64,000 bases of DNA from Chlorokybus atmophyticus. Its lineage: Eukaryota; Plantae; Mesostigma and Chlorokybus algae. Position numbers and translations under genes: made by a program. A model generated the notes under the pieces. The model had not been told where the DNA came from, did no database searches, and worked only from the letters and a program-made list of their open reading frames with translations. The stretch spans positions 195,350 through 259,349 of the forward strand of contig RHPI01000671.1 of the NCBI GenBank assembly GCA_009103225.1. Direction: 5' to 3'. Positions 3,001 through 64,000 of the stretch are shown here, one piece after another (position 1 is the first letter of the stretch; each line of letters begins with the position of its first letter).

Positions 3001-3795
3001 TGCATACGGGTGCGTTTACCGGTATGCATGCAAGCCCCTTGCATGGGTCCATGCATGAGTGCATTCCCAACGTGAGGGACTCATGCACGCAAGGCTAAAC
3101 CCATGCAACGCCCGTACACGTGGAAGGCCTTTGTCTGCATTACGTCACCTGACAGCGCGCATTGCACGGAGGTGTCCGTGCCTGCTGCGTCCGTGTGCAT
3201 AGTTGCAATCTAGGGTGAGAGGGCCTGCATGCCATGCAGTGGAGGGCCAAGCATTTGCAAAGCGAATGACACGAGATCTGACACACACGGCGTCAGATCT
3301 CGCTTGGTTCGTATGGACCACTGAACTTGCGATTGCTCAAAACATTTCATGTCTCTCCAGATTCCTTGTCGAGGAATCTGGAGGTTGTCGTGAATTTCCC
3401 ACTTTTCCCCAGTGTTGATATCAACAATCAGGGTTACTTGCTTGCATGCATGCATGACTGCATGCAGTCTACCGCTCTTTAGTGCGCCACAGCAATGTCT
3501 GCGCTCCTATACAGTGTCACATTTTCATGTGCTTGAAAACGGAGTAGAAAAGCTCTTGCGTCGCAGAGGGGTGAGAGGCAGCTGGCCTGGCCTGTCCCCT
3601 GTCGTCTTGTGGCTGGCTGCGCAGCCTTTGGCTCTGGCAAGGTTGGCGTGGTGGTTTGCTAGCTGTTGGTCTTAATTCAACGATAGAGGGTGAGAGAGCC
3701 CAGCTGTCACAGAGGTTGGCTGCTTTGAGTTTGGTAGCAGCGTTGTGTGGTGTTGTGCTGCGCTCTTTGGGGCGCTGCTGCTGTTGCATGTAGCC

Positions 3796-6700
3796 ATGCA
3801 AGCGTACTTGAGAGAAGCTGATAGCTGGCGTGCTGTTGCTGCTGCTGGCTTGCAGCCGCCTGCTGGTGCTTTTGGGATGGAAGGAGCCGGAGGAGGGCTG
3901 CTGTCATCGCTTAGCGGCGGCGGCCTGAACTGCCACATGCCAGCACCGCCGCCCTTACCTCCACAACAGCAGCTGCCTCTCTTCTCCCCTCCTCAGGACG
4001 CTCCGCAAGCTTCTCTTCTGCAATGTCACCCCTCCCCTGCCACAGCGGCCGCCGCCGCCATCTCCCTCTTGCCCTTCAAGGAGCCTCGCAGCTGGCGGCT
4101 GGCCATGCTGGGAGCCAGCCTGCCTGGACTCCTCGCGCCCAATAACACCAATAACCTGCTTCTTCTTCCCGAGCCTCTGGAGGCCGCTGCCGCCAACGTC
4201 CTGAACGACCTCACGCCCAGGGTTAGAGTTGTGCATGTTGACATGCACATGCACGAGCATGCTTGCATCATGCATCTGCGATGTACGCATGCAGCTGCAT
4301 CGAGCACAACCCTACGGTACTGATGCAGTAGTACGGATAACCAGTGCACAAGTTGTGATGCACAATGATACTACTGTGCATTACAACTGGTGATGCACAG
4401 TATGATGTGCACTGCTATTGATATTTCTGCTAGATCCATAGCCACAACTTAAGCTACAACATGCTTGTCAATGTGGGCAATTGTCATCCCACAATCACGC
4501 TTGGTTACGCACATTGTATCTGGACCCGGAAGGCTTTTGCACTTGAGAACTCATGTGTATGCTTTGACATTGCTTCCTTGAGGGCACCCGTCGTGTGCGG
4601 CTCAAGTCACACAGACAATGTGACTGACTCACTATCAAGCTTAGGTGTATGTCTGCGTCTCTCTGTGTGCTCAGCCCAGATCTAAGACATCAAGTAGCTG
4701 TGGATGACACAGCCATCAGAAGCCTTCTGAGACTTCACTACACGACATTCCATGGTTTAGGAAACTCACACAGCAAATGTATGTATGCTTGCACAGAGCG
4801 CAGAGCCCACAAACGAAGCGCCCGCGACAACCACTACTGCTTGCGGAGCAGAGGACGGAGGGCCCGTGTGTTTTGCAACAGGTGCGGTGCTGATGATGCA
4901 GCCGCCGCAGGCGCCAAAGCCCGTGTTCGACACCACAGGTGCAGGGGACGTCGTCAATGACATCACTACGCTTGCCGACGACACCGGCAACGCCGCCACC
5001 AATAGCAACAGCAACGTCGCCGCCGGCAATGCCTCCGGCGCCAAGGGAACAACACCGCCCACGATGACGAGTGCAATCAGGGCGCAGCGGGCACGGTCGG
5101 CCCGCACACGCCTTGCTGGCCACCACCTTGCCAGCAGGTACCAGTCATGTTGTTATCATGTAATATGATGATGCTTCTTTTTACTCTTCCATTTCATGCA
5201 TGTGTTCTGATGGCTGCATCTGACTCTCTGATTCTCATTCAGGAGTGTCTCTCAGCCGCAGCAGAGAGAGTTGGGCGCTGCTTCAGCCTGCGCGATGCCG
5301 TCATCGGCCTCAAGCATGTTGAGGCAAGCGCCGATGGCGGTGGGGAGCCTTATGGAGCTCATGACAGCGAGGAGCTCAGATGCACAGCAGCAGCAGCAGA
5401 TCCAGGCGCAGGGCACAGGGCCTCAACCCTCTCGAGCTCAAGTGGCGACACAGAGCCGCACGCCCAAGCGGCAACGCCAGAAAAGGCAACAACAACAACA
5501 ACAACAGCAGCAGCAGCAACGCCAGCAGATTAACAACACCTCGCAGGTACTCTGCATGCAACAAAGGTCCTTGTTGCTCAATACAGATTGATTCAACCTG
5601 CCTTGAAGGCCTTTATCACTCACGTTCATGTGTATGACATGTGGCAGTTGCCTTCCATGCTAGCTGCGCCCAGCGTGGCGTGGCCCAAGCGTCACCCCAC
5701 CACCACCACCACCGCCAACAACAGTAACATCGACAACAACGTTGCCACTGGCCACCCTGGCGGCGACATGACGGACGCCGACTGCTGCTCGTCCTCTTCA
5801 GAACTCTCCGGTGTAGCAGCCTGGCAACAGCTGTCCGCTTGTCTGCCCGCTGAGGCAAGCATGCATTCATGCATGCGCGTGTACGTGTGGTTGTGTGTAC
5901 TCAACATGCGCGTTGCATCAGTGCTTAACCCAGCTGCTTGACTGTGTAGGCTACGTCGCCAATCCATCTGCCGGCTATGGCCCACGCCGTTGCGAATGCA
6001 GAGAAGGTGATGGCAGAAAGCTTGCCGATCAATGATGCCAGCGCCGATGATGCGGCTGTTGCAGCTGCAATGGCTGCTGCTGAGACCATCCATCATGCAA
6101 TTGGTACGCTGTTCTAAAGATTTTAAACAGTGTTCACATCTAGCAAGCGGACTGCAACACAAGATGATTGTCACGCAATTTGGCAGGTGTGACGTGGTGT
6201 GACATGTTCACTGTGTGTGTGCAGGTGCGCAGCCGGGAACGCAGAAACAGGCGCTGCAGGAGACGCTTGCCAACATGCGCAAAGACTACCAGGTCAGGGG
6301 CATTGCAGCATAGTTTATGCACGCGTTTTCTGCCAAGCATGCCAGCTGCCAGCTGTCGGTGACTTAACTGGCAGCTGAGCTACTCTACTCAACCATACAC
6401 ATGCTGCTCAGGTGGCTCCATATCCAGCAGAAGTGAGCAAAGTGTCTCCCTCCGTGGCCCGTCTCCTCCGATCGGTACGCCACACTTGTGCCACATATGC
6501 GCCATTGCTGAATAGATGATGACGCTGGAGTGAGGATGTTTATAGTAGATAGAAATGTGCTTCATCTTCTGTGCTTGCACAGGCTGAGGAGCTGGCAAGC
6601 GCGGCGGCGGAAGAGATGCAATGCATTGATCGCTGCAGCATGTCGCTGGTCGCGCGTGCCATCCTGCACCTTCAGAACATACCGCAGCCCTCGCCAGCAT

Positions 6701-10462: not shown

Positions 10463-10708
10463 NNNNNNNNNNNNNNNNNNNNNNNNNNNNNNNNNNNNNN
10501 NNNNNNNNNNNNNNNNNNNNNNNNNNNNNNNNNNNNNNNNNNNNNNNNNNNNNNNNNNNNNNNNNNNNNNNNNNNNNNNNNNNNNNNNNNNNNNNNNNNN
10601 NNNNNNNNNNNNNNNNNNNNNNNNNNNNNNNNNNNNNNNNNNNNNNNNNNNNNNNNNNNNNNNNNNNNNNNNNNNNNNNNNNNNNNNNNNNNNNNNNNNN
10701 NNNNNNNN
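10463..10708. other. Assembly gap (N run) flanked by G/C homopolymers
   Basis: Run of N in the sequence. Confidence 1.
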
Positions 10709-23472: not shown

Positions 23473-24061
23473 CCGTATTTACCCGTATAGAAGCCCCTCC
23501 NNNNNNNNNNNNNNNNNNNNNNNNNNNNNNNNNNNNNNNNNNNNNNNNNNNNNNNNNNNNNNNNNNNNNNNNNNNNNNNNNNNNNNNNNNNNNNNNNNNN
23601 NNNNNNNNNNNNNNNNNNNNNNNNNNNNNNNNNNNNNNNNNNNNNNNNNNNNNNNNNNNNNNNNNNNNNNNNNNNNNNNNNNNNNNNNNNNNNNNNNNNN
23701 NNNNNNNNNNNNNNNNNNNNNNNNNNNNNNNNNNNNNNNNNNNNNNNNNNNNNNNNNNNNNNNNNNNNNNNNNNNNNNNNNNNNNNNNNNNNNNNNNNNN
23801 NNNNNNNNNNNNNNNNNNNNNNNNNNNNNNNNNNNNNNNNNNNNNNNNNNNNNNNNNNNNNNNNNNNNNNNNNNNNNNGGGAAGGGCGGTGTGGTGGCGG
23901 AGAAGAGCCCCCCCCCCGACAAGAACCGCTGGCAAAAAAGGGTGGAGGGCTTGTGTAATAAATCCCATTTGCGGGCAAATATAGGCTCTACAAGCCCTCC
24001 TCCCGACACAAAAGGGTAGGAGGCTTATATAATAAACAAGGGCTTCTCCAAGTAAATACAG
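23473..24061. mobile_element. Second Tc2/pogo-like MITE, spanning an assembly gap
   Basis: Left CCGTATTTACCCGTATAGAAGCCCC, right GGGCTTCTCCAAGTAAATACAG. N gap at 23501-23878 lies inside it. Confidence 0.5.
23501..23878. other. Assembly gap (N run)
   Basis: Run of N in the sequence. Confidence 1.
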
Positions 24062-39281: not shown

Positions 39282-42952
<3,671 letters not shown>

Positions 42953-45351
42953 AATGTATCACCGCTGCACTTCATGGTTGTAAGGCTGCAGGAGTTATTT
43001 TCCCTCAGGACTTTGTGACAGTGGCATGCGCTGTTGTTTGGTCGCTGTGATGTACAGGTAGATAGTGCAGGGTTGGCGTAGTATTTGTGGTCAACAAGTG
43101 TGTGGTGCTGTGAGGTGGTAGTAGGCCCTTGTACAGTCGCAATAAAAGCTAGTCAATGTTCAAAGGAACGAATCAGAACAGCTGGAGCTGTTGCGCATGT
43201 GTAACACACTACCTGGTGCGTGCGCTGCAAGAATAGTGTTGGTGGCAGTCACATGCGATGACTGACTCCCACAATTGCTTGCATTGCAACATCCTTCGCT
43301 GACATATTGTGAACATGCTCTATATCGTGAGTGTATGTGGAACTTGCAGCAAAGATGATAGTAAAAACATAAATTGCGGAGTACAAGTGCCCACGCATAG
43401 AATATGCAATTAGTACAGGACGGGACCGCACACGACGCAGGCACAACCTCGACAGTGAAGGCAGAACAACAGCATATACCTTTTGTACACTGCAGCATAG
43501 CATCACACGCCAACAATCATGATCATCATTTCTTTCATGTTGGTATACAACTAGCCGGACTTTTAATGATCATGAATGTCGATTCCATCTTGGCGAAATT
43601 ATGCTGCCTCCACCATGGTCACTTATGAGTTGAACATCAATAGTTCTGTCGTGATGGAAATGATAACATCATGTACGATAATGATCAATTAGCATATAGA
43701 TTTGCTACTTGTAACTACCCGTAACAACCAAACAATTGTAGTTCTTGATAGTGTTTGGAAAGCAAACGCTTCTTGCACCAAAGTGACATAGTCAGCTACA
43801 CATCGGCATTCAATGATATTGATATGTATGCATGATTGATTCATAGCTATCATGTATCAGACTGTGAAGAGTGCGCTTAATGATAACTACTTCGGCTTCA
43901 AGTTGTTTACACCCTTTATCTATTGTTACGTGCAACAATTTGACACCGTGCAATAAGTACAATAAGTATCAAAACAATTACACTTTGATGTAAGCTTGCT
44001 ATTTACGATACCTGTGTTTTGTTGAAGCATCCATTAACCTATACTTTGATTATAAGGCACAAGCATCTTAGTACAACTCGACCGAGCCCAACTGATGCCG
44101 TGTACTAGATGCACGATGTCGACTTTTGCAAATGTCACTTTCCTCGACTTATTGATGCTTTAAAACTGATAATTCATGAAATGTTATTATGTTGACGAAT
44201 AAATCTTTCATTCTTGCAATTATCAATAATGTATTTAATTACAAAAGTGAGAAACCTAGGCCGTTTTTGTTTGTGCAATTGAATTCATCGAAACATTCGA
44301 TATGAGCATTCATGTTCATAATAGTGCAAACATTGCGCCATCAATTCCACATAATTGGAGCGTATTGCTAATAATCAATAACCAATAATAAATTTATGAT
44401 CATTATCAGACCATAATTTATCATATGCCATTGTGGTGGATAGAGTACAAAACACATATCATGCATGATGTCAACAGATTATAATCAAACTTTTTCTTTC
44501 TTTTTAACAATGTTGCATGACTTTTGTACGATCTTTAAGGGCAATAATGTAATTGTAAGATGAACTCCATGGCACGCAAACATGTGAGAAATGTTAACAT
44601 CATAATTGCCCCTATGTCAGCGCATACACATGGGCTATGCATGCAGGGTTGATAACTTTAGCTCATAGACAATTTGTGGTAGTACTTGACATGATGATGG
44701 ATGTGGTTAATTTGTGCTTTGCATGTAAATGTGCATGTCAACCCACCATGTGCGCATGCAAACACGCCTTGAGCATGTGTGATGCAGCATCAAGTACATA
44801 TTGCATCAATACTAAACAAAACCCTTTGTATAAGCAATATAATGTGGTAATGCACGTGTGGCTTGGGCCAATGAGGTCCACCCGCCTGGCTTCAAGCCAG
44901 TGTCAAGTTGACACTGTCAAGTTTACATGGTCTGACAATTTGCATGCAAAATGTACAACGCAGTGTACGTGCTTCCTGCGGGCTAATGCAGACGCGGCAC
45001 AGTGCGCCACAGGCCAAATTTGCCAGTCACTCATCACCCTTCCATAGCAAAGTTGACAACGTCAAGGCGGGGTGACAGCGTCATTGTCGGCATTGTTGCC
45101 GCCGCTGGCGTGGTTGCCGAGAAGGAAGCTTCCTCCTGGCCCTGATTGGTTGGGCTGGTTGAGGCTGTGCGAAGCCAGCCGAGGAGCAAGCAGCGGTGAG
45201 AGGAGTTTGCGGGCTGCAGAATAGTCCAATCAATCAAGGAAGGCTTGATGCACGGGGAGGTGCCTTACTGGTTGTCACCTTAGCTTGGTAAAGGTGTAGG
45301 GTTGAATTTGTGGCGATGAGCGGTGGACAGCCAGCTGGTTAGCCCAACAGG

Positions 45352-46425
45352 ATGCAAGTAGAGAAGGAGGGCGAGGGCGAGGCCAACCTGGGTAGCGACG
45401 CGGACGCGGGGGCAGAGACCGTGGCGGTCACGTCCGTCGGCGTAGGCGCGGGCGGGGGAAACACGGCTTCGCGATGCCTTTTCCTGGGGGCCGGCATGGG
45501 ATCCCGGAGCAACGCGAAGGGGTACCGCCTCGAGGTAGAAACGTCCACTGGCGACGCCGGGAGGGACCCGCTGGTGTTCGGCAACATGGACACGGCGAGC
45601 GTGCCCTTCCTGTCGATCAACGGCGCGCTTCGCGTGTATCAGCGCAGTGCCGCCGCCGGCGAGGGCACGGGCTACGGCCGCGACGGGCTAGTAATGCTGA
45701 GGCACGAGGACCCATCATCGGTATGGCAGCTGTACCAGGACGACGCCAACAATCTCATCATGCGCCACAACAGCCACCCGGTGTTTGTGTACGAGAACAA
45801 TGGCACCGCGGCCGATGCTGCGTCCCTTGACTTCACCGGTCAGCACGTCAAACCGACCTCTGCGCTGAAAACCATGATGGCAACCGGCGCCGTTGTCCCA
45901 GGTATGGTGGTGCGCTCTACGGGCAAGATATCGACCGTCCTGCACGCCAGTGGTCTCGCCTCTCACGACAAGAGGGGGATCACAGTGTCGCAGGCACTGC
46001 CCGAGGTGGACCTGTGTGTCGAGCGGTGCGACCGCGCATGTCTCGGTGTCATTGCGGGCATGGTAAGCTCGATGGTCGACGCCGACGGCAGCAAGTATCG
46101 GAGGTACAAGGTGGGAGGGGGCAGCTGCCTGTTTTGGATGCAGGAGGGCGACGATTAGCTCATTGTCAACTCGGTCGGTGAGGGTGCCATTTGGGTGCTC
46201 GACAGCGCGGGGCGTGTCCGAAATAACGACCTCGTTACGATTTTGTGCGTCGCAGGATACGCCGAACGACAAGACGACGATCTGGTGCGCAGCTGCACCA
46301 TGGCGAAGGTGACGATGGACTGCGAGTTTGATGAGGATTCTACGGAGTACATATGCGAGCGCATCGAGTGCGCCGACCGGGTTTACCACAGGGCGCTTCT
46401 TGCGTGCACGTACCGTGCTGGGTGA
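45352..46425 (+). pseudogene. Virus-like fibre protein fragment with C-terminal S74-like chaperone/autocleavage-type domain; in-frame TAG
   Basis: One intronless frame interrupted only by TAG at 46156-46158. It reads DFTGQH, GMVVRSTG, ALPEVDL, LIVNSVGEGAIWV, GYAERQDDD, AKVTMDCEF and LLACTYRAG*. I recognise this motif order from giant-virus and related dsDNA-virus fibre-like proteins (FTGQH...INSxGEGxIWV...TYHCG). The N-terminal FLGAGMG...PLVFGN resembles tail-fibre repeats. No database search was run. Confidence 0.7.
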
Positions 46426-46926
46426 AACCCATTGGCACTGTGTTCCATGCTACATGGACCTGAGTAGAGTTCAAGTTTTATAATCATTGTATACGCAACA
46501 ACGTTGTCTACTACTTCTTGTAACTTCGTCGCGTATACATCCACAGGAAGCAGAACAAGGGGGGATAGAGCTGTTTGAGCAGGAGAGAAGGAATGGAGCC
46601 CCAGCCAGCAGACATAAAGCCTCCATTCCTTCCAATTGCGATATTGCGAGTGGAACCAACAACAAAACAACGTTGAACAGCACCCGCACCAAGACTAAGT
46701 CAAGCATTAGGGTTAGGGTGCAGTGCACATTCTTCTTTAAGCTAAGAGTATAAACAAGCAGTATACACAAGCTTACTGCTAAACACATGGAGTAAGAGAT
46801 CACACACTAAGACAGGTCCTATACTGACACACATTAAGAGGGAGGCGTGGGGCACTTTCCTACTGTTCTACTTACTATGCCCGCTGCCTGGCCTCCAGTG
46901 CCGTACGTGGAGACGCAACCATCCTC

Positions 46927-48800
46927 TCAGATCACCAAGTTATTGCCTTTGGATCCAAAAAATTGTCCGGATGTGCTGCGGATTACCAAAGCTGTGAGCT
47001 GTGTGCCGTCGTAGATGGAAGCCAACCTCTGTTGGGTGCTGGATGCTATCTTCCAAGCATCAAGCCATATCTGCAGAAAAACAGGCTCGGTTGTACTCAA
47101 GTTGGCTACGCCAGTCGTGTAGGCTATGCGGACGTCTTCCCCTCGCATCTGAGCCAACCAGTCCCGGATAATGAGAACACATTTCTTGGGATCATCGCTT
47201 CTAAATGCACTTATGGTATATCTAATAGTGCCAGGATTGTCGTAAGCAAACAGGTTCACACTTTGAACGGTAATTTCTCCGTTCTTGTAGAAGCTGTTGA
47301 CGAGGGATTGCAGGTCTGCCACGTTCTTGTTGGCCGAGTTGGCAAGCGCCTGACAGTTTGCAATGTGCTGGTTGGCTGAATTGACTCGGGCCTGCAGGTT
47401 CACAATCTGTGCCCGGAGTCTTGCGATTTGTGTCGGCGGGATCGCGTTGTACAGAATGGCATTGCAGTAACCGCCTGCATTCCAAGTGACGTGTATGAGA
47501 GAGAACGCGAGCAAGAAAACGAAAGAGATAGATTTCCCACCGTACCAGGACTGGTGTAGACAAAGACGTCTATGGCCCTGGTTAGCTGTGTTGCATTGAT
47601 GACGCAGTACACATTGTAAGCAACGGAGGGTGCGAGTGGAAACACCAGCGACGTTTTGGCGGTTGCGGTAACTTTGGGCCCAAAGAGAGTGCAGACAGCC
47701 GCCCTGGTAGGCGTGACCGAGTAGCCGTTCAGGGAGGCTGTCGCTCCCGATACTGAGCTTGAAAACAAAATGTTGAGAGTGACGGAGTCGCCATTTACGC
47801 CATTCACAATCCGAATAGTGGTACCGGTGGCAAAATTCTTCACACAGGACTGCCAGGAGCTGATGACGTTGGGGTCGATCCAGTTGTTAATGTACTGGTG
47901 ACACTGGTGTCACCTGAGGAGGAGGACGATGAAGCACCACAGCTGGTGCGCTTGTACTCGTATGCATTGTTTTGAAAGAGACTAAAGTGGTCAGCTGTCA
48001 TGTGGTTGTCTCCCCAGTCAGCTAATCCGCTGGCATCCCACATGCCTATTTGGCTCGCTGACGCGTCGATGTGGCGCGCGTAGCTGTCGGTGCTTTGGGC
48101 GCTAGAGTCTGCTACATATTTGGCATAAGTGTAGCTGCTATCGTAGGTACAAAGAGTGGTCTAAAATTGGGAATAGCTCTGACTCGAAGTGCTCTGACTC
48201 ACTGAATTGTAGACGCCCTGCTCACCCAATTCCACAAGTCTGTATAAGTTTCAACTTGGCAAGGCCTTGCATGCGCACATGAACATGCACAAGGAGGGGG
48301 GGGGGGGGGGGGGNNNNNNNNNNNNNGGGGGGGGGTCCAAGGGAGACCACAGCAAGGACCAAGAGTTCGGCAAATAAATAGCAATACTAGTCCTTATGGG
48401 CATCAGCGTACCTGTTGCAGCACTGCCGCGCATGCAGAGATGGGGCTGCTCTGTCCAAGAGCAGCTGTGGCGAGGGCCAGGAGAACAGCAGCGGACATCA
48501 GCATGAAACCAGCATAAACGCCAGAACTGCAGCACCAAAAGCACATGGTGAGTCAGTACTACACCAGAGATGTCAGACCGACTGTTCTTAAAGGTAGACA
48601 GATCTCGTCATAAGATGCTTGTCATGAGGTGGGGCGAAGAACATCAAACATCCATGCCCAGCCAGATGCAGTCACATGCGTGCATGCCAAGCCCACCACT
48701 AAAGACCATACTAGCGCAAGCACACGCTCAAGTGCGCACACACGTGCTTAGTGAGACAGAGAGGTAGGAGAGCGGCTTACTTGCAGCATCGCTTCGCCAT
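46927..48800 (-). CDS. Unrecognised secreted protein (about 430 aa, 4 exons, one apparent frameshift)
   Basis: Exons 48800-48781, 48526-48412, 48160-47546 and 47474-46927 are joined by GT-AG introns. The N-terminus MAKRCCNSGVYAGFMLMSAAVLLALATAALGQSS is signal-peptide-like. Exon 3 needs a 1-nt frame change near 47905-47915. A heptad segment (IARLRAQIVNLQARVNSANQHIANCQALANSANKNVADLQSLV) follows. Confidence 0.65.
48314..48325. other. Assembly gap within poly-G, inside intron 2 of the secreted-protein gene
   Basis: N run; the exons on either side are in compatible phase. Confidence 1.
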
Positions 48801-48932
48801 TGTCTGACTCTGGGTTCAATGATAAAACTGCAACGCAAACGATAGGAGACAGTGGGAGACAACAACTGCACACCCCAGGGTGATGACTGCCGCAACGCCA
48901 GCTGCTTGCAGATAGATATACAGGGTTTAACC

Positions 48933-49232
48933 CTAATAGGGTAGTGTAGGAGTCCAAGTTGCAGTTCGCGGAGCAGTCCACGGCCCCGCGGCCAGAACCG
49001 CGGCGCCGCGGATTGGACTCTCCGCGGCCCAATGGAAGATTCTCCTGCCCAGTCGCGGCAAGTCTCCCACCCGCGGGGCCCCGCTACGACCCGCCAATGG
49101 CGTGCCGTTGGAGTAGGCATGGTTCTGGGTGCTCCAAACCCACACAGCGGCGAGCGGCATCGCCATGGTGCGCAATATGCGCGGCGTCCAGCTGCGTGCT
49201 TTCTTCTTGCCGCACCATTCTATGCGCCGCAC
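48933..49232 (-). pseudogene. Intronless ORF remnant with a partial duplicate of the neighbouring ORF
   Basis: RILRTMAMPLAAVWV here versus RILRTAAMPLAAVWV in 49251-49595. The match is also visible at DNA level (49140-49190 versus 49300-49375). Confidence 0.4.
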
Positions 49233-49250
49233 AGGATAACGCGGCTGCAG

Positions 49251-49595
49251 CTATGCACTACCGTCCGCAGCGAAAGTTTGCGGGTTAGGGTTCGCCAAGA
49301 CCCACACGGCGGCGAGCGGCATTGCGGCGGTGCGCAAGATGCGCGCGGAGGCCCTCGCGTACTCCAGCTGTTCGATCAATCCCTCGATGTCGCACTCCAG
49401 CAAGTCTGCGAGCACGACCATCTGCTGCGCTTGGCCCACCAGCGTATCGCCGACACCATCCATCAACGCGCTAGTGACATCGTCGCAGCTGGATCCGGCC
49501 TCACACGCGCAACGCAGCGCCAAATGGGCCGCATCGACATCGGACACCGCAGCCATCAACTTTGCGAGCGCCGCTGCTTCGAGCGAAGCAAGCAT
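49251..49595 (-). CDS. Small intronless helical hypothetical protein (114 aa)
   Basis: ATG at 49595 follows a short A/T spacer (gaatattattg). Sequence MLASLEAAALAKLMAAVSDVDAAHLALRC...; CpG-rich. Confidence 0.45.
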   Translation of the reverse strand: MLASLEAAALAKLMAAVSDVDAAHLALRCACEAGSSCDDVTSALMDGVGDTLVGQAQQMVVLADLLECDIEGLIEQLEYARASARILRTAAMPLAAVWVLANPNPQTFAADGSA

Positions 49596-49683
49596 GCCCT
49601 TTCCTGTTTTCCGCGCGCACAATAATATTCACCGGCCTAACGAACCGCGCTGTTGTAATGCAGTCGCGTGACGCGCCGCTTCG

Positions 49684-50820
49684 TCATTTCTCGCGGTCTT
49701 GCCTCAGCCACGCGGCGATTCGATCGGACTTGCGCTCCAACCCGTTTTCCCACTCGTTCTGCCCCAGTTCTAGACGCCAGATGTCTTGTGCGTACTTGGT
49801 TCTGCGCTTGTCCATCTCGTACACAATGACATTAACCACCGCTTCCCGCCACCACTTCTCGGTACAGTCCATGGGTTTATTCCGCGATTGTTTTTTCATG
49901 AGGCGTTTGGCGTCTTGCACGTAATAGATGTCACGTATCATGGCGGAGAGGTCGTTCGCGTGCCAGGTGGAGAGAATGTTCGATATGCCTAAGCCGATCG
50001 GTTCGAACTCCAGCTTGTCGACGGTCTGCAGCGCGTCTTCTAAATCAACGAGCCATCTGCCGGTCAGGCAGTCGTGGACTAGTCTCAACGTCTCTTCGTG
50101 GCTGCTCGCTGGTGGCCGTTCCTGTGCCAGTCGGGCGCGGCGCCTACGGACAGCGTCGACGGACTCTCCGGGTTACGCGAGCGTCAGAGTGCCGTTGCCG
50201 TCGCCGTAAACCGGCTTCTGTAGCGTGTTTGCGCAGTCGAGGTACACCTGGCAGTACGTCTGTCCCAACCGGGCAACCGCCTTGATGGCGCCAGCGGGAA
50301 CCGTTTGCTTGTGTCGCGCTATGGTCAACCGATCCAATTCTGGAGCTCCATTGCGAAGCTCCGCAACGATGAGATGGTACTGATGGTGCGTTTCCGCTAG
50401 GACGCTTGACGTGTCCATTGGCGACTTCCACGGTGCACCGATCAGCCATCGCGTGCGGTTGATCGGGCACGATGCGAACAGCATGCCGGACTCCAGGCGC
50501 TGAAGCGGGACCATCGCGGCGCGTATGCGGGCGGCGGCACCCGCCCCGCGCTCGAGCTCGCGAAGGACGACGCAGCGTTGATCTATGTCTCGGATGGCGT
50601 TTCCTAATTTGAGCCGTTGAGCGGAGACGCGCTCGACGTCCTGCAGGCAATCTGTAACACCGCGCGTCAACGAAACCAGCGTGTACACTTTCGACGCAGG
50701 CGCGTTCAAGGACCAGGGTTTCGGTCCTTCCTCCGTCCCTCCCGACAACTCGTTGCACGCTCCAACAACTACGCCAGGCCCTGGGCTCGCTGCTGGGCAC
50801 AGGCCACGCGCTGCCGAATG
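49684..50820 (-). pseudogene. Intronless hypothetical gene, 5'-truncated and frameshifted (two overlapping frames)
   Basis: Frame 50173-50820 is open without an ATG up to the TIR end. A second frame, open from about 50185 to 49684, overlaps it. Both have natural-looking composition (for example WWREAVVNVIVYEMDKRRTKYAQDIWRLE). No family recognised. Confidence 0.45.
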
Positions 50821-50849
50821 TAACTACTAACAAGCTGCCATGGTGAACA

Positions 50850-50912
50850 CATGTCCAATGGGGTATGGGCAGTAGAGAAGGTAGGTAGCGGCTAGGTTAG
50901 CAGCCCGGTGGT
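50850..50912 (+). mobile_element. Right terminal inverted repeat of the CCACCGGGCTAC family
   Basis: catgtccaatggggtatgggcagtagag...ttagcagcccggtggt, matching the ends at 9545-9599, 20370-20417 and 28607-28670 (reverse complement). Confidence 0.65.
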
Positions 50913-52793: not shown

Positions 52794-54874
52794 TTAGTGC
52801 AGTATTTCTAAATCTGACTTCAGGCCAACCAACAATGACGCAATTTCCCACAACCGCGCAGCTGTCTCAGCGTCATATGCTGTGGGGTTTGCCCTCATTG
52901 GCTTAGCTGTGGACGTGTAGTACGATGCCTGCAATTGGGGAGTGGTGGCTACATGCAATGTGCACCTGGCGCCTGCACAATCAGACAGTGTCTGGTCACT
53001 TGACGCAGGTCGCAGCTTCACACATCGCAGCATGCCGACTACCTGTCAAACCAGTCATGCATAGCAGTCCAGTGATGTGTGTGTGTCTCAGCAGAGAGTC
53101 TGGTCAGCGCTTGCGCGTGTCCTATGCTATTGGCATCAACTTCTGAGAAGACATTGGGACCTTTGGAAAGACAGCCGCTCACCTTCTTCTGGTGTCAATA
53201 GGATATATGAAAGCGATAACCGGTACAGCCGCTGCATCAATCTTGGCAGAGTCCGGACCTGGTCATTTGCAGGGCAATGTAAGCCGCAGGGACACCCGTT
53301 GTGAATAACAGAGTGACTGAGGCAGCAGGCTCACCACTTGCGTAAGTATGTTGCCAGGGTGCAAGGCAACAGAACTGACGTGCAATGGAGGTAACCTTCG
53401 AGCAAGCTCAAAACTAAACAGCACCTGCCCAAGCACAACAAGGTAGGAACAAAGCCGGTTGGGATAAGTGCCCAGAATTATGCAAAGTCATGACTATAAC
53501 TCCTATGTGCATATGCATTGTAGGGTTGAACCACGTCAGATCACAAGGGACAGTAGTCCCATATGTTAAGCAGACACCTAGTGCATTTCTGTTAAAGTAC
53601 ACTGATAAAGCTACTGCACTAAACCATCACAGCACGAGCATGCGGGTGACTTGCTGCGCTCTCAGGCTTGCACACAACTGCAGTAAGCCACCCTTACCTG
53701 TGCTAGTTTGCTTTGGCTGTACGCGCGTTCAGCTGTGTAATGCTTCTGCAGCTGAAGATCGTCGAAATGGATGGCACCAAGCTCATGCATCTGACACCAC
53801 AACAACCATCAGTGCCATACAAAAAACAAACAAAGCAGCTGGCATGACGAGACCAGCCCATAAGATAAAGGTTGTCAATGGCAGCTATACATCCCGTGCG
53901 TAGTAACCCGAATGCACGTACCGCGGATGAGATCATCACCACTCGTGCCGGCTGTCCGCGCACAAGTGCCGGCAGGAGCAGCCGAGTTAGAAGGAAATGA
54001 GACAGGAAGTTCACACCAAAATGCGATTCAAACCCATCTGCGGTCTCACTTCTTGAACCTGTATGCGTGCAATGGTCAGGTATGCAGTCAAGAACTGATG
54101 AGCTCGCTTTTTCTTGCAACGTTAACAACTGTTGTAGGCCAGCAGTGGTGCCTGACAATGCTTACCAACCATAGAGAAGATGCCGGCATTGTTGATGAGT
54201 ACATTGACAGGCAGCTTGCGCTTGTTGATGATATCTGCGAATGCTTGCACCGACGCTAAGGAGTTCAAATCAAGCTGCAGCACCTATCAACTGGTTGCAG
54301 TCAACAGCAAGCTTGTAAGTGAATAACCGAGATAATCATTGGCTAATCACAAAAGCCACGTGGCCATGCCAACTGCAAAGAAGCGCTGCTGACCTCGGCT
54401 TTGAGCTCTTTTCCAGCGCCCACTTCTAGCTGCCACCTGGCAACCAACTCCTTCGCCAACTTCTCATTGCGACAGGCAAGTATCACACGGGCTCCGGCTT
54501 GCGCCAGTATGCTATTGAAAACCACATGTCAAGTGAGCTGCAATGCCCACAATCACGGTGCAAAGACGAGCAAGTGAGCTGCAATCCAGTTCAACATGGG
54601 TGTACCGCGCAGTCTCTAGTCCGATGCCACTGGTGGGGCCAGTGATGATACATGTTTTGCCGGCAATGCTTGGATCGCACATGCTGCGAGCGGAAGGCAT
54701 CCCGCGTACTTGCCATCGCTGTGTGCATGGAGACATGCATGCTCGTAAGCCCATGTCATTTGACGCACTAACAAGAGGACGCTGAAGTATCAATTTGCTC
54801 CGTACCTGCGTGATGACATCCCAGGCCACAAACAGCAGTCCTTGCGCCCAGTTCCACCATTTGCTCGACATCAT
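52794..54874 (-). CDS. Short-chain dehydrogenase/reductase, retinol-dehydrogenase/WWOX-like subfamily
   Basis: [67 protein letters not shown], and C-terminal [15 protein letters not shown]. Some internal exon ends are approximate. Confidence 0.9.
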
Positions 54875-55580
54875 GCGTAAATCACAAGCGGCGATGCTGT
54901 CGCCTGCAACGCAAAATTGTAACTAGTATCATGGCAAGCTGTGCATGCCAACAGCTGACACAGAAGACTAATGCATGTACCGGACCGGCAACGCCTTAAT
55001 GCAGCATTCGCAAAAGCAAATGAAGATGGCACGACCATATGCGCAATCCAAGGACCCAGCGCACATGCGTAGCGCTAAGAAAGCCATTACGGACAAGCAA
55101 GCCCACACCGGCCGGCCAGCAGCACTGGCAGCGTGGCTACGTACAGCATCGCAGCCATGAGACATGTAACAACCCAGCCCAAACAAGAGCAGTACCTTTG
55201 CAGGCACAGCAGTCGTCTAAGCACGACCGATGCCCCCACCTCCACACCGACCTCCCTCGCCGCCGCAGCGGTCAAAGCACTCACAGACATGGCATGCAGC
55301 TTGCATGATGGAGTGCCATGCTGCCCTTGCGCGCTTGTTGGCGGTGAGGCCGCAGTGCGCGTCCTTATCGGGGCGCGCGCTGCGGCGCAGGAGTCGACCC
55401 CGCGAGTGGGCATCGCTTGGCTACTGACCATAGCCTAACCGATCGCTGTTTTGGTGTGCCAGCTGGCAGAAGGGTACTTGCGTGAGAGGGTTTGTGCTGA
55501 TTGCTGGACGGCGCGGCGGGCGGCGGTGGCGGTCGTAATCGTGGTCGTGGTGGTGGCTGGGGTGCCTTCTGTGGCTAGTC

Positions 55581-59850: not shown

Positions 59851-61270
59851 TTATTGGTGTGGTAGCTGTTTCCTCTCCCGCAACAAGCTCTCAATAAAGA
59901 ATTCTCCTGCACGGTACGAGGAGCGCACAAGGGGTCCGCTGGCAACATATCTGAAGCCGAGGACATCCTCACCATACTCCCGCCAGTGCTCAAACTTCTC
60001 TGGAGTGACATACTCCTTGACAGACAAGTGCAGCGGCGTGGGCTGCAAATACTGCCCGAGGGTGAGGACGTCCACGCCGGCAACCTCGCGCAGATCGCGC
60101 ATGGTGGAGCGCACCTCCTCATCAGTCTCCCCCAGCCCCAACATGATGGAGGACTTGGTCACCAGCCCAGGAACAGCAATCTTGGCGTGGCGAAGCACGT
60201 CAAGGGTCTGGTCGTACCCCGCGCGGGGGTCACGGACGGGCCTTTGCAGCCGTCGCACAGTCTCCACATTGTGGGCAAAGACATCAAGTCCAGAGGCAGC
60301 AACAATCGCAACATGCTCAGGATTCCCACGGAAGTCACCCGTAAGACACTCCGCAAGAATATCCGGCCTCAACGCCTTGAGAGCGCGTACCGTGGCAGCA
60401 AAGTGGCCCGCACCACCGTCGGGTAGATCATCCCTGTCCACACTTGTCAACACAACGTAACCCAACCCCCACGACGCGATGGCCTTGGCGACATTCTCGG
60501 GCTCGTCCGGGTCGGGAGGCGCGGGGTTGCGCGAGGTCTTCACTGCGCAGAAGCGGCAGCCGCGCGTGCACGTGTCGCCCAGGATCATGATGGTGGCGGT
60601 GCCGCCAATGCCGCCGTCGCCGCTGCCACCATTCCAGCACTCGCCTATGTTGGGGCATTGCGCCTCCTCGCACACGGTGTGCAGGTTCAGATCCCTCAAA
60701 CTCTCCTTCAAGAACTCGTACCTAAAATAGCAAGATATATACATACACAGACCATGCACTGTTTCAGGTTCAGGCTATATTCACTAATTCTGCAAATCCC
60801 TTTCAGACTACAGCACTACCAGATCAAGCGACATTGCATGCAGGCATGCAGCTACTCAGCTCAATTCCGCATTCTGCAAGTGAAGACGTCATGCAACTAC
60901 TAACATTAAGCATTGTGCGTTATTGTTGAACAACTTTGAAAGCCCAACCCTGCTCGGACGCCGAACATTGCGGGAGCTAAGCCGCTCACCTCTCCCCTTG
61001 TGGCGCTCTTTGTCGCAGCCAGGGTGGCTTGCTGCTGCTGCTTTTGGCCGCAGCATTCGCCTCGCCTGTCTCCCTGATAGCTGGAGGCCTCTCTGGCGTT
61101 GCGACTGCCGCCGTCCGCTGCGTGGCTGCTCGCCGCCGCTGCTGCTTCTGCCGCCCACTCCTGTCAATTGCGGGTACAGCACCGCGCAGACGTCCAGCTG
61201 GCCTTCCATCGGGCAGCAGCCCTGCGTGAATTGAGCTACCCAATCCCACCACCACGCCCGCTGCCGCCAT
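59851..61270 (-). CDS. LIP1p: Lipoyl synthase, plastid type (radical SAM; 2 exons)
   Basis: [14 protein letters not shown]|[25 protein letters not shown] and RSSYRAGE. The [15 protein letters not shown] segment resembles the plastid isoform. The start codon is uncertain (61270 or 61426). Confidence 0.9.
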
Positions 61271-62239
61271 CTCCGCCGCCGCCGCCGCCGCCGCCACCGC
61301 CACCGCCACCGCCACCGCCGCCCCTTGCCGTCCACGTGGCACTACGTGCAGTGGCTGTCCGAGTTGGCAAATGCGGAGGACATCGACTTCAAGCAAGTTA
61401 GATATCGGCATTGGGATCAGCGACATCAACCTGTTAGTGATTAGATTGGTGCAACTAGTGCGTTGCGCGGCGCAACTAGGGCCTGGTGCAATCAGCAGTG
61501 CACACATGCGAGTCGTAGGTGGTACCAGCAAGTACACGCTGGCGAGGCTGCAACCTTGAAAGTGATTGGTTGCGTTTCATGATGCCCGGTAGCCGAGTGC
61601 TTTGCAAGCACGAACAGGCTGCTCGGAACAGCCATTGTCGTGCGTTGTTGAACATGAAGGTTAATGACAGTGTCATTAAGGTTAATGACAGTGTCATTAT
61701 GACACGAAAGCAGGCCTTAGGCTCTAGCTAAGAGCTCCAGCTTAGGGTCTCCTAGCCTAGCAGTTTTAGGCTTTCAGTGCCGTTTCATGACGATGGTGAA
61801 TTCGACAATGAAATCCCGCCACAAAGTTCACCTTCAAAGTTTAATCCAGTCATGACTCATGAGTGGAGGGTGCCGAAGTGCATGCACCGTGCAACGTGCT
61901 GGTTGTCACCGCAAGCTGCCGCAGCACAACATGCCTGCGTATCCCCCTACACCACTAGCCATAAAGGTCGCCCGGACTAGCCTACAGAGCCCTTAGCCCC
62001 TCCGCATGTCGCTGTACAGACGTGTGCCATGCGGCGCGTGGCCCAGTAGCGCTGCTGGCGGCGGCATTGGCGGCGGCGGCGACGGCGGAGGTGCTGCCGA
62101 GCTCGCTGAGCTCGCCGTTGTCCGCATCGTAGGTGTAGATAGCCATGCGTTTGGCCGCCTAATGCGTGCGGACCGCAAGGATCCGGCCATGCTGCTGCCC
62201 AGGCGGCGGCAGCGTGGCCATAGGCCTAGCTATGCCGGT

Positions 62240-64000
62240 ATGGCGCCGGCGCTACTGGCGCTGGCGCTGGCGTTGCTGTTGACGGCGCTGCCTACTGCAA
62301 GTGCCCAGTTTGCTACCGTCACGTAAGTGTTGTTGTTGCTCGGCCTAGCTCTAAGTGCTCTGGCATCACCATGAATGCAAACAGCAGCTACATCCAAACT
62401 CTAACATACTGTCATGCTTGCAGGGGTTGCGTCTACTGTGATATCTGTAACAATGGTAAGCTGTGTCAGCTGCGCTTGTACTCACTGTTTCACTCTGTAT
62501 GTGTGCTGATAGCTAGCAGGAGCAGATAGCAAGAGCAGGTAGCTCACTTAGCAGCAGAGCTTCTCACTTCTATACTTGCTCTCTCAGGCGTGTTCAACGC
62601 GCCAACCGACACGCAGCTTGCCAACGTCCTCATGCGCATAACCTGCACGAACAGTTTGGGTGTGGAGACGACTTCCACCTTCAGCACCGATGATTCGGGT
62701 TGCTACCGGCACGATGCCGTGCCTTCGGTAGAGTGGTACGAGTCTCAGGGTGAGATATATGCAGCATGCTCAGTACTGCCAGAAGACGCCAGTGGTGTAG
62801 CAACTTGCGGCAGCAAATCCACGAAAGCATGCGGGTCAGCTTATACCTTTAACGGCGACAATGCCTTACGCGCGGACATCGTGTACTCGGTGAGTACCAT
62901 GCGTAGCTTCTGTTGTATCAAGGCTGCTGCACAGAGGTATCGCAAGGAGTATGGACTGTAAATGGTATCAACGTGCAGTATGTACTACACATTGAACTGC
63001 ACATTGTGATATGCAGTACATTGTGCATTACATTGTGGGCAGAAACTAAGCTATGCATGTGTGTTGTGTGTGGTGCAGGTCCCTTTGCCGTTCTCTTGTT
63101 TCAGGCCAGACACGAGCCCTCAGAGCTGCTTTCCCTCGCCTCCCCCGCCCAAGCTTTTGCCACCTCCGCCCCCAACCCCACTCCCACCCCCGCCAAGCCT
63201 CTCGCCGCCTCCACCTTCCTCACCGCCTCCAACACCACCATCTTCACCGCCACCACAGCCTCCACCACCTTCACCACCGCCGCCGGGACCTCCACCTTCT
63301 CCACCACCTCCATCTCCACCACCACCACCGAAGCCCTCACCGCCACCACCATCTCCACCTGCACCGCCCCCGCCTAAGCCCTCACCGCCCCCGCCCTCAC
63401 CCCCTTCACCACCGCCGCCATCCTTGCCTTCCCCACCACCACCGTCACCACCGTCGCCACCGCCACCACGACCGCCTTCACCACCCCCACCTGTGATCTC
63501 ACCACCGCCACCGTCGCCACCACCACCCTCTCCACCTTCCCCACCACCTGCAAGGCCGCCACCATCTCCACCGCCGCCATCACCGCCTCCACAATCCCCT
63601 CCACCACCATCTCCACCTTCACCGCCCCCGCCTAGGCCATCACCTCCACCACCGTCACCATCACCACCTGCACCACCCCCACCTAGGCCATCACCCCCGC
63701 CACCCTCGCCACCGTCACCGCCTCCACCATCTCTGCCATTCCCACCGCCACCTCGACCTCCTCCTTCACCCCCACCGCCATCTCCACCTTCGCCACCCCC
63801 ACCGGTGCTCTCACCACCGCCGCCGTCGCCACCACCACCCTCTCCGCCTTCTCCACCACCTTCAAGACCTCCACCATCCCCACCTCCTCCATCTCCACCA
63901 CCCCCGCCAAAGCAATCACCCCCGCCACCAGGACCTCCACCATTCCCACCCCCACCCTCTCCACCTTCCCCACCGCCCCCTGGAGCACCGCCATCCCCAC
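62240..64000 (+). CDS. Secreted extensin-like hydroxyproline-rich glycoprotein with an N-terminal Cys-containing domain (3' incomplete)
   Basis: Signal peptide MAPALLALALALLLTALPTASAQ, a globular exon (VLMRITC...TDDSGCY, Ole e 1-like pattern), then more than 900 nt of SPPPP/SPP repeats continuing to the window edge. Confidence 0.85.

What the first reader, a model, noticed from the sequence alone, without database searches (positions are those of the whole stretch)
45340..50912. Composite foreign island: decaying virus-like genes interleaved with a spliced secreted-protein gene
Between HSP70 and the SDR, after 2 kb of AT-rich spacer, two blocks (45340-46425 and 48930-50830) are intronless, CpG-rich and lack the tgca/gcatgc-saturated texture of host introns. 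The first encodes a virus-type fibre/chaperone-like protein with a premature stop. The second is a tight array of unknown ORFs with a frameshift and a truncation at a TIR end. Between them lies an intron-containing secreted-protein gene. Block 1 is gap-free with HSP70 and block 2 is gap-free with the SDR, which argues for true integration rather than a contaminant contig. Inference: an endogenous giant-virus or Polinton-like-virus remnant rearranged by transposons, possibly with one gene being domesticated. No hallmark gene (capsid, packaging ATPase, polB) is present, so the virus group cannot be assigned.
Basis: partly seen in the sequence, partly recalled or inferred. Interest (0 to 1): 0.8.

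Follow-up and report, generated by a model that had tools for sequence, protein, structure and literature searches.

The report
Giant-virus gene relics beside host genes
Two short CpG-rich stretches between a host HSP70 gene and a dehydrogenase gene are foreign DNA, and one of them is the broken rear half of a virion spike-like gene otherwise found only on chlorovirus-like giant-virus contigs; this is a small, ordinary example of a known kind of viral fossil in algal genomes.

Summary
The compositional observation holds. Blocks 45.3-46.4 kb and 48.95-50.8 kb have GC about 0.62 and CpG o/e 1.17-1.27, against a host median of 0.71. Their dinucleotide signature is further from the host bulk than any of 96 host windows. 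It is closer to each other and to virus-like contigs.

Block 1 is the C-terminal ~60% of a ~650-aa protein: one in-frame stop, no frameshift, N-terminal ~40% absent. An exhaustive HMMER search found 9 relatives. Where their context could be read on contigs of 15 kb or more, they sit among dense intronless genes with PBCV-1-type capsid markers. Their N-terminal halves match phage tail-spike and virion-structural families.

Block 2 looks coding: a 354-codon frame with one stop, plus a small ORF. No relative was found, but long kin could not be searched for.

The gene between the blocks is host-like in composition. It has two clean GT-AG introns, and the assembly gap lies inside one of them, within a poly-G run. 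No TIR, transposon or hallmark gene was found.

Verdict: a fragmentary endogenous chlorovirus-like (Phycodnaviridae-type) insertion, a new member of a known kind. Domestication and transposon rearrangement are unsupported. The host species was not identified.

The parts
39282..43200 (+). Host HSP70 gene, multi-exon (neighbour; 3' end approximate)
   Evidence: Exon ORFs; Pfam HSP70 E 2.7e-43 and 1.2e-35 on two exons.
43500..44900 (.). AT-rich spacer (GC 0.33-0.43), CpG o/e 0.70, no coding signal
   Evidence: only weak inverted repeats.
45343..46425 (+). Block 1: 3' part (about 60%) of a ~650-aa giant-virus virion spike-like gene. Broken by one in-frame stop, no frameshift, N-terminal ~40% absent
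   Evidence: HMMER: 9 relatives, best E 2.4e-32. tblastn of relatives gives one HSP each, best E 2e-59, reaching their C-termini. The profile of relatives covers positions 233-571 of 572 in two adjacent pieces and finds nothing for positions 1-232 in 42.0-47.5 kb. Period-3 power 19.5, codon-position GC 0.64/0.49/0.81. 64 of 85 well-conserved family columns are retained.
45357..45382 (.). Left copy of a short direct repeat at the island's outer edges (11 nt exact, 19/26 overall)
   Evidence: chance about 0.006-0.01, assessed post hoc.
46927..48546 (-). Middle gene: spliced, predicted secreted protein (signal-peptide exon, Ser-rich linker, beta-rich segment, coiled-coil-like segment). Composition is host-like. 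One of its three junctions has no clean canonical intron
   Evidence: Dinucleotide distance to host 101, within the host range. No hits in Pfam, NCBIfam, PDB, viral contigs or the virus-like loci.
48161..48411 (-). Predicted intron 1 of the middle gene (GTACGC...AG, phase 0/0); contains the assembly gap
   Evidence: Read; frames.
48314..48326 (.). Assembly gap inside a poly-G/C homopolymer run
47475..47545 (-). Predicted intron 3 of the middle gene (GTACGG...AG, phase 1, 71 nt)
   Evidence: Read; frames.
48930..49250 (.). Left part of block 2: CpG-rich with no period-3 signal. Holds 5 of the window's 10 CCGCGG sites and a diverged 63-nt duplicate of the 3' end of the small ORF
49251..49622 (-). 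Block 2 small ORF (123 codons from the first start codon, 114 from the first ATG), apparently intact; acidic, helix-like; no relatives found
   Evidence: searches.
49684..50748 (-). Block 2 long frame: 354 codons with one in-frame stop and no ATG near its start (probably 5'-truncated); no relatives found
   Evidence: Searches, all negative. The two word searches could not see kin longer than 1.75x each piece.
50871..50896 (.). Right copy of the edge direct repeat
52900..54900 (-). Host short-chain dehydrogenase gene, multi-exon (neighbour; bounds approximate)
   Evidence: TGxxxGIG motif and exon ORFs; adh_short E 5e-5 on one exon.

Best explanation
The island is an inert relic of giant-virus DNA of a chlorovirus-like (Phycodnaviridae/Algavirales-type) lineage. 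It was integrated into the nuclear genome of an intron-rich, roughly 52% GC eukaryote, probably a green-lineage alga, between HSP70 and a short-chain dehydrogenase gene.

Shown: block 1 is the rear ~60% of a gene for a ~650-aa protein. Full-length relatives occur, wherever their context could be read on longer contigs, on gene-dense intronless contigs carrying PBCV-1-type capsid genes. Their front halves resemble phage tail-spike and virion-structural proteins. Here the front half is missing and one stop interrupts what remains, so no full-length product can be made.

Shown: block 2 has the same foreign dinucleotide signature and coding periodicity.

Inferred: block 2 comes from the same kind of virus and carries one broken, 5'-truncated ORFan gene plus one small ORF.

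Inferred: the insertion is fairly young or protected from methylation-driven decay. CpG is undepleted, there is one stop per ~350 codons, and family-conserved residues are retained as well as in intact relatives.

Inferred: the host-textured 2.5 kb between the blocks, with its spliced secreted-protein gene, is host DNA. Either it split a once larger insert, or it separates two captured fragments.

Likely mechanism (inferred): end-joining capture of viral DNA fragments. The 11-nt direct repeat at the two outer edges is compatible with microhomology, but it may be chance.
For: Composition and signature.

Block 1 homology: 9 relatives among 1.84 billion representatives, best E 2.4e-32; tblastn E 2e-59 to the relatives' C-termini; profile positions 233-571 of 572 covered, one stop, no frameshift; 64 of 85 conserved columns retained.

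Viral context of relatives: searches show dense genes on both strands with Capsid_NCLDV, MIP, dCMP deaminase, DNA methylases, P8_CR, DUF5767, DUF5901, SWIB and GT25. One search gives PDB 8h2i MCPv2 at E 3.9e-7. One search gives P8_CR at 3.6e-29 and DUF5901 at 5.7e-115.

Spike-like nature of the family: (phrog_4636 tail spike 4e-18; phrog_6002 virion structural protein 3.2e-19). add a periodic beta-strand N-terminal region and weak BFVD matches to giant-virus and phage adhesin or fibre-like proteins.

Block 2 coding signal.

Contiguity with host genes.

Precedent: Phycodnaviridae-like inserts in Klebsormidium and other algae (PMC5294986). One relative is K. nitens GAQ93146.1, on a contig with the same gene order as the virus-like contigs.
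Against: Block 2 has no detectable relative anywhere, so its viral origin rests on composition alone. No hallmark gene lies in the island. The contigs of the relatives are metagenomic or from raw-read assemblies, so they could themselves be endogenous copies rather than free viruses, and some are too short to show any context. Contiguity cannot be verified without reads, and the two blocks are joined only across a gap. The host was not identified. The structure model of the family is of low confidence (pLDDT 56.6), and the PDB fold search was not significant. The function of the C-terminal domain kept here is therefore unknown.
Confidence: 0.65

Rival explanations
1. Only block 1 is viral. Block 2 is something else: a lineage-specific GC-rich host ORFan locus, or DNA from another foreign source such as a bacterium or an unknown mobile element. 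In that case the island is not one composite viral relic.
For: No relative of any block 2 ORF was found in Pfam, PHROGs, NCBIfam, PDB, the word search, viral, metagenome or prokaryote contig scans, or 120 kb of virus-like loci. Its ORF lengths are not beyond chance.
Against: Its dinucleotide signature is closer to block 1 (106) and to the virus-like contigs (101-125) than to any host window (minimum 127, median 203). It shows period-3 signal and typical codon-position GC. ORFans are the rule in giant-virus genomes (general knowledge). The word searches were blind to kin longer than 1.75x the pieces, which is the very reason block 1's kin were missed and then found.
Confidence: 0.2
2. The blocks are assembly chimeras or contaminant viral reads stitched into a host scaffold, not true integrations.
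For: The scaffold has four gaps, one of them between the two blocks. Viral DNA can be co-sequenced with algal cultures, as discussed in PMC5294986.
Against: Each block runs without any N into host-textured DNA and host genes on its outer side. Block 1 is truncated and stop-bearing, which is not expected of a replicating virus. The fragments are only 1-2 kb with sharp boundaries on both sides. The gap sits within a homopolymer inside a phase-compatible intron.
Confidence: 0.07
3. The pieces are not dead: they are domesticated. The 268-codon open stretch of block 1, the small ORF of block 2 or the middle secreted-protein gene would then be expressed host genes of viral origin.
For: Block 1 starts with an ATG and keeps strong coding periodicity and family-conserved residues. 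The small block 2 ORF is intact. The middle gene has clean introns and a signal peptide.
Against: Block 1 lacks the whole spike-like N-terminal half and loses its conserved C-terminal quarter to a stop. Good preservation is equally expected of a young insertion. The middle gene has host-like composition and no similarity to the virus-like loci. No expression data are available.
Confidence: 0.1
4. The island derives from a Polinton-like virus, a virophage or a Polinton/Maverick element rather than a giant virus.
Against: There is no TIR and no PLV, virophage or Polinton hallmark gene in the island. Block 1 relatives sit on 15-60 kb contigs with NCLDV capsid, P8 and other chlorovirus-type genes.
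Confidence: 0.03

Closest known systems
Phycodnaviridae-like viral inserts in Klebsormidium and other algal genomes (Gallot-Lavallee & Blanc 2017, PMC5294986)
   Same: Giant-virus-derived DNA of Phycodnaviridae type in an algal nuclear assembly. One of the nine relatives of block 1 is a K. nitens protein (GAQ93146.1) on a contig with virus-type gene order.
   Different: Those inserts are contigs dominated by viral genes with core genes (polymerase, capsid, ATPase). Here only 1.1 kb and 1.9 kb survive, there is no core gene, and the junctions with intron-rich host genes are visible. Identity to the K. nitens protein is only about 38%.
Giant endogenous viral elements (GEVEs) of green algae (for example Chlamydomonas reinhardtii field isolates, PMC9693826)
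   Same: Endogenised Nucleocytoviricota DNA in green-lineage genomes, compositionally distinct from the host.
   Different: GEVEs span tens to hundreds of kilobases with hallmark genes. This is a small, degraded fragment pair without hallmarks, so it fails the usual GEVE criteria.
Chlorovirus (PBCV-1-type) virion genes
   Same: Contigs of the relatives carry genes matching PBCV-1 MCPv2 (PDB 8h2i), minor capsid protein P8, DUF5901, DUF5767, an aquaglyceroporin and cytosine methylases.
   Different: No named chlorovirus protein came back as a direct hit to the window's protein. The family has no Pfam model. Membership of the relatives' viruses in the genus Chlorovirus was not tested by phylogeny.
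Phage tail-spike / virion structural proteins (PHROG phrog_4636, phrog_6002)
   Same: The N-terminal halves of full-length relatives match these families (E 4e-18 and 3.2e-19). They are predicted as periodic beta-strand repeats.
   Different: The window retains only the C-terminal part, which matches no phage family. Fold matches to solved tailspikes are not significant. No Peptidase_S74 chaperone domain was found.

Membership tests
Endogenous Nucleocytoviricota fragment (viral insertion in a eukaryotic genome) | Encodes protein(s) whose relatives are giant-virus genes | tested here: met
   Met for block 1. Context of relatives. Not met for block 2, which has no relatives.
Endogenous Nucleocytoviricota fragment (viral insertion in a eukaryotic genome) | Contiguous with intron-rich host genes (Filee's criterion, quoted in PMC5294986) | tested here: met
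   No N between HSP70 and block 1, nor between block 2 and the dehydrogenase. This holds at assembly level only; read support is not testable here.
Endogenous Nucleocytoviricota fragment (viral insertion in a eukaryotic genome) | Composition departs from the host | tested here: met
Giant endogenous viral element (GEVE) | Large region with several hallmark genes (capsid, polB, A32 ATPase, VLTF3, D5) | tested here: not met
   No hallmark domain in any island ORF. No other part of the 64-kb window matches 120 kb of virus-like loci.
Chlorovirus-like Phycodnaviridae origin | Relatives co-located with PBCV-1-type structural genes | tested here: met
   8h2i MCPv2 E 3.9e-7; P8_CR 3.6e-29, DUF5901 5.7e-115, DUF5767 7.7e-22.
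Chlorovirus-like Phycodnaviridae origin | Phylogenetic placement of hallmark genes within the clade | not tested
   No polymerase or full capsid phylogeny was made, and reference sets are not at hand.
Tail fibre with intramolecular chaperone (Peptidase_S74) | C-terminal Peptidase_S74 auto-processing domain | tested here: not met
   No Pfam hit in the window pieces or in nine of the relatives. BFVD matches to such proteins are at E 0.06-0.3 only.
Tail-spike-like virion protein | Beta-solenoid repeat region matching tail-spike families | tested here: inconclusive
   Met by full-length relatives. The window lacks that region. The PDB fold search was not significant.
Polinton-like virus / virophage / Polinton | Small-virus capsid pair, packaging ATPase, protease, pPolB or integrase, TIRs | tested here: not met
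TIR DNA transposon | Terminal inverted repeats and target-site duplication | tested here: not met
   No TIR. The only feature is an 11-nt direct repeat at the island edges, of doubtful significance. No transposase was found.

The most novel reading that the evidence does not exclude
The whole 5.5-kb island, bounded by the 11-nt direct repeat, moved or was inserted as one unit. The host-textured, intron-bearing secreted-protein gene would then have travelled with viral DNA, either as a giant virus that had captured a spliced host gene or as a host segment shuttled by viral DNA. Block 2 would represent genes of a chlorovirus-like lineage with no sequenced relative.
Probability: 0.08. Interest if true: 0.6.

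Novelty: new member of a known kind. Interest (0 to 1): 0.3.

Why it matters
It adds a clean, junction-resolved example of giant-virus DNA fragments lodged between ordinary host genes. It ties an unnamed protein family (nine representatives among 1.84 billion) to chlorovirus-like viruses as a probable virion spike protein. It also shows that undepleted CpG in a CpG-depleted host is a workable flag for such relics. It does not change what is known about endogenisation of giant viruses in algae.

Tried and rejected
1. Word-based protein searches of the larger block 1 piece and the two block 2 pieces found nothing. For block 1 this was a length-window artefact, since its relatives are 623-662 aa. 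The same caveat remains open for block 2.
2. Pfam, PHROGs, NCBIfam and PDB sequence searches of all island ORFs gave nothing significant.
3. Back-translated pattern scans found nothing relevant: viral contigs, metagenome contigs, prokaryote genomes. One search found only a weak match to the N-terminal repeats of a relative.
4. tblastn against phage genomes gave no match.
5. A single-sequence AlphaFold model of the block 1 piece was unusable (pLDDT 37). The alignment-based model of relative P0001 was mediocre (56.6) and its PDB fold search was not significant.
6. TIRs, dispersed repeats, tRNAs, Rfam families and promoter or terminator scans gave nothing.
7. Exact look-ups to identify the host genome failed.
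8. A profile search for the missing N-terminal half in 42.0-47.5 kb found it absent.
9. The telomere-like repeat and the CCGCGG cluster were considered as terminal or regulatory features. They are left as unexplained observations.


Full report
**1. The observation**

The window is about 52% GC and CpG-depleted. In 500-nt windows the median CpG o/e is 0.71, and HSP70 exons give 0.63-0.86. Two stretches stand out sharply, at about 45,300-46,430 and 48,950-50,800. Their GC is 0.61-0.63, their CpG o/e is 1.17 and 1.27, and they hold few TGCA/GCATGC motifs.

The symmetrised dinucleotide signature gives the following distances (x1000):
- Blocks to the host bulk: 186 and 181. The largest value among 96 host windows of 1.5 kb is 148.
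- Block 1 to block 2: 106.
- Blocks to three virus-like contigs fetched later (L001, L002, L004): 101-129.
- The 46.9-48.3 kb segment between the blocks to the host bulk: 101, which is inside the host range.

The compositional part of the finding is therefore real and beyond chance. A few other CpG-rich spots exist (21.5, 36, 60 and 63 kb), but they are host exons or low-complexity coding repeats.

**2. The gap**

N runs lie at 10,463-10,708, 16,552, 23,501-23,878 and 48,314-48,326. The last one sits inside a homopolymer, with 18 G on one side and 9 G on the other. No reading frame used in this report crosses it.

On the minus strand it falls inside a predicted 251-nt intron (48,411 down to 48,161, GTACGC...AG). 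That intron separates a signal-peptide exon (48,546-48,412) from the next exon (from 48,160). Both exon ends are in phase 0.

The simplest reading is an unresolved poly-G tract within one locus. Continuity itself cannot be proven from the letters. If the join were wrong, each block would still be contiguous with host genes on its own side.

**3. Block 1**

The plus-strand frame has coding-type codon-position GC (0.64/0.49/0.81) and a period-3 power 19.5 times the mean. Family libraries, the PDB and the word search found nothing.

The exhaustive HMMER search of 1.84 billion representatives found nine relatives, the best at E 2.4e-32 and 40% identity. The top ones are 623-662 aa, and the query aligns to their rear part. 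They are longer than 1.75 times the query, which explains the blank word search.

tblastn of the relatives against the window gives a single HSP each. The outer bounds are about 45,316/45,367 to 46,413/46,422, the best E is 2e-59, and the alignments run to the relatives' C-termini. A profile built from the relatives alone matches the two stop-delimited pieces over profile positions 233-483 and 485-571 of 572 (E 3.4e-61 and 8.8e-31). It finds nothing for positions 1-232 anywhere in 42.0-47.5 kb.

Count of lesions: one in-frame stop, no frameshift, and loss of about the first 40% of the gene. The fragment agrees with the family at 64 of 85 well-conserved columns. Intact but independent relatives score 0.57-0.81 on the same measure, so decay is slight.

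**4. What the relatives are**

- L001 (a 49.8-kb ENA contig), L002 (60.2 kb, JGI), L003 (15.1 kb, Logan) and L005 (37.5 kb, JGI) are packed with intronless genes on both strands.
- Gene content includes a capsid gene matching PBCV-1 MCPv2 (PDB 8h2i, E 3.9e-7; Capsid_NCLDV 1.5e-6), minor capsid protein P8 (3.6e-29), DUF5901 (5.7e-115), DUF5767, SWIB and glycosyltransferase 25. It also includes an MIP channel, dCMP deaminase, C5 cytosine methylases and TnpB-like genes.
- One relative is Klebsormidium nitens GAQ93146.1. It lies on the 7.9-kb contig DF238272.1, which keeps the MIP - relative - methylase order of L001 and L002.
- Other relatives lie on short contigs (0.9-6.5 kb) that show little or no context.
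- Gallot-Lavallee & Blanc (PMC5294986) had already described multiple Phycodnaviridae-like inserts in that alga.

The family is therefore virus-associated and chlorovirus-like in context. It is not a vertically inherited algal family.

**5. What the protein does in the virus**

No Pfam family matches any of the nine relatives scanned. In PHROGs, the N-terminal halves of the full-length relatives match 'virion structural protein' (phrog_6002, 3.2e-19, 9 of 18 rows) and 'tail spike protein' (phrog_4636, 4e-18, 8 of 18 rows).

An AlphaFold model of P0001 with the 18-row alignment has pLDDT 56.6. It shows short strands every 16-17 residues over residues 15-230. BFVD matches are weak (TM 0.1-0.3) and go to giant-virus and phage adhesin or fibre-like repeat proteins. 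PDB matches are not significant.

I conclude, as an inference, that this is a virion surface spike or fibre protein. The window keeps only its C-terminal domain, whose role is unknown. No Peptidase_S74 chaperone domain was found.

**6. Block 2**

Three minus-strand ORFs (191, 134 and 123 codons) have coding-type codon-position GC and period-3 power of 4.4-6.9, against about 1 in the spacer and intergenic DNA. Their lengths alone are not beyond chance for this GC (P = 0.2).

The first two share one frame. Together they make 354 codons with a single stop, and neither has an ATG near its start. The third is in another frame with its own early ATG. I therefore count one stop, a probable 5' truncation, and no demonstrated frameshift.

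The leftmost 320 nt (48,930-49,250) shows no periodicity. It carries a 78%-identical 63-nt duplicate of the small ORF's 3' end and five of the window's ten CCGCGG sites.

No relative was found by any route. Absence of relatives is therefore not established. Viral origin of block 2 rests on composition alone.

**7. The middle gene (46,927-48,546, minus strand)**

The model has four coding segments. The first and third junctions are canonical, phase-compatible introns with similar donors (GTACGC, GTACGG). At the second junction the two frames overlap in the open state for about 30 codons without a good canonical donor. That is either a short weak intron or a frameshift, real or a sequencing error. 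RNA data would decide.

Composition and GCATGC texture are host-like. Exons were searched one by one, by reference, and gave nothing. The same holds for HSP70, and this is why the host species could not be looked up by exact protein (searches failed). The signal peptide is my reading of the first exon, not a tool result.

**8. Borders and mobility**

There is no TIR, no transposase, and no second copy of any island part in the window. No other part of the 64 kb matches 120 kb of virus-like loci. No tRNA or Rfam family is present.

One oddity remains: an 11-nt exact direct repeat (19 of 26 overall) lies at the outer edge of block 1 and just beyond the outer edge of block 2. Such a match occurs in 19 of 3,000 shuffles and in 6 of 577 real window pairs. 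The test was post hoc. The repeat is compatible with microhomology at an insertion of the whole 5.5 kb, or with chance.

**9. Verdict**

This is a fragmentary endogenous insertion from a chlorovirus-like giant virus: a known kind of feature and a new, small member of it.
- That block 1 is such a relic: about 0.9.
- That the whole island is explained as in the best explanation: about 0.65.
- Transposon rearrangement, Polinton-like origin, a chaperone domain and domestication are not supported.

**10. Conduct**

Broken genes were searched as separate pieces. Alignments across the stop were used for scores and outer bounds only.

Noticed in passing
window 45357-45382 and 50871-50896: Direct repeat (11 nt exact, 19/26 overall) at the two outer edges of the island. 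Chance is about 0.006-0.01, assessed post hoc. It could be microhomology or a target duplication for the whole 5.5 kb, or coincidence.
   Followed up: partly
window 48986-49076: Five of the window's ten CCGCGG palindromes cluster within 91 nt, in the non-periodic left end of block 2. The relatives' contigs encode cytosine methylases, so a viral methylation or regulatory target is conceivable but untested.
   Followed up: partly
window 46707-46718: Interstitial telomere-like TTAGGGTTAGGG between block 1 and the spliced gene. With one mismatch allowed, 0.1 matches are expected in the window.
   Followed up: partly
window 49121-49183 and 49283-49345: A 63-nt direct duplication (78% identity, 162 nt apart) repeats the 3' end of the small block 2 ORF.
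   Followed up: partly
window 48296-48335: The assembly gap is embedded in a long poly-G tract, probably a homopolymer that the sequencing could not read through.
   Followed up: yes
L001 17950-19044; L002 2547-3032: TnpB/Fanzor-like genes (Cas12f1-like TNB domain, E 4.7e-22) on the chlorovirus-like contigs that carry the block 1 relatives. L002 also has a resolvase next to it.
   Followed up: no
L004 (K. nitens DF238272.1) 1-5847: The alga's 7.9-kb contig keeps the MIP - spike-like gene - DNA methylase order of the metagenomic contigs L001 and L002. In the annotation its gene models were given introns (the product does not equal the straight translation).
   Followed up: partly
window 63050-64000 and 61235-61345: Long proline-rich coding repeats with very strong period-3 signal, like hydroxyproline-rich cell-wall glycoprotein genes. 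This is a weak hint that the host belongs to the green lineage.
   Followed up: no
window 43500-44900: A 1.4-kb AT-rich spacer (GC down to 0.33) with weak inverted repeats (43557-43687 / 44392-44424). Similar AT-rich stretches border the other assembly gaps at about 10.5 and 23.7 kb.
   Followed up: no
L008 3-3626: A 1207-aa gene with a kinesin motor domain (E 1e-11) lies directly upstream of a block 1 relative on a 6.5-kb metagenomic contig.
   Followed up: no
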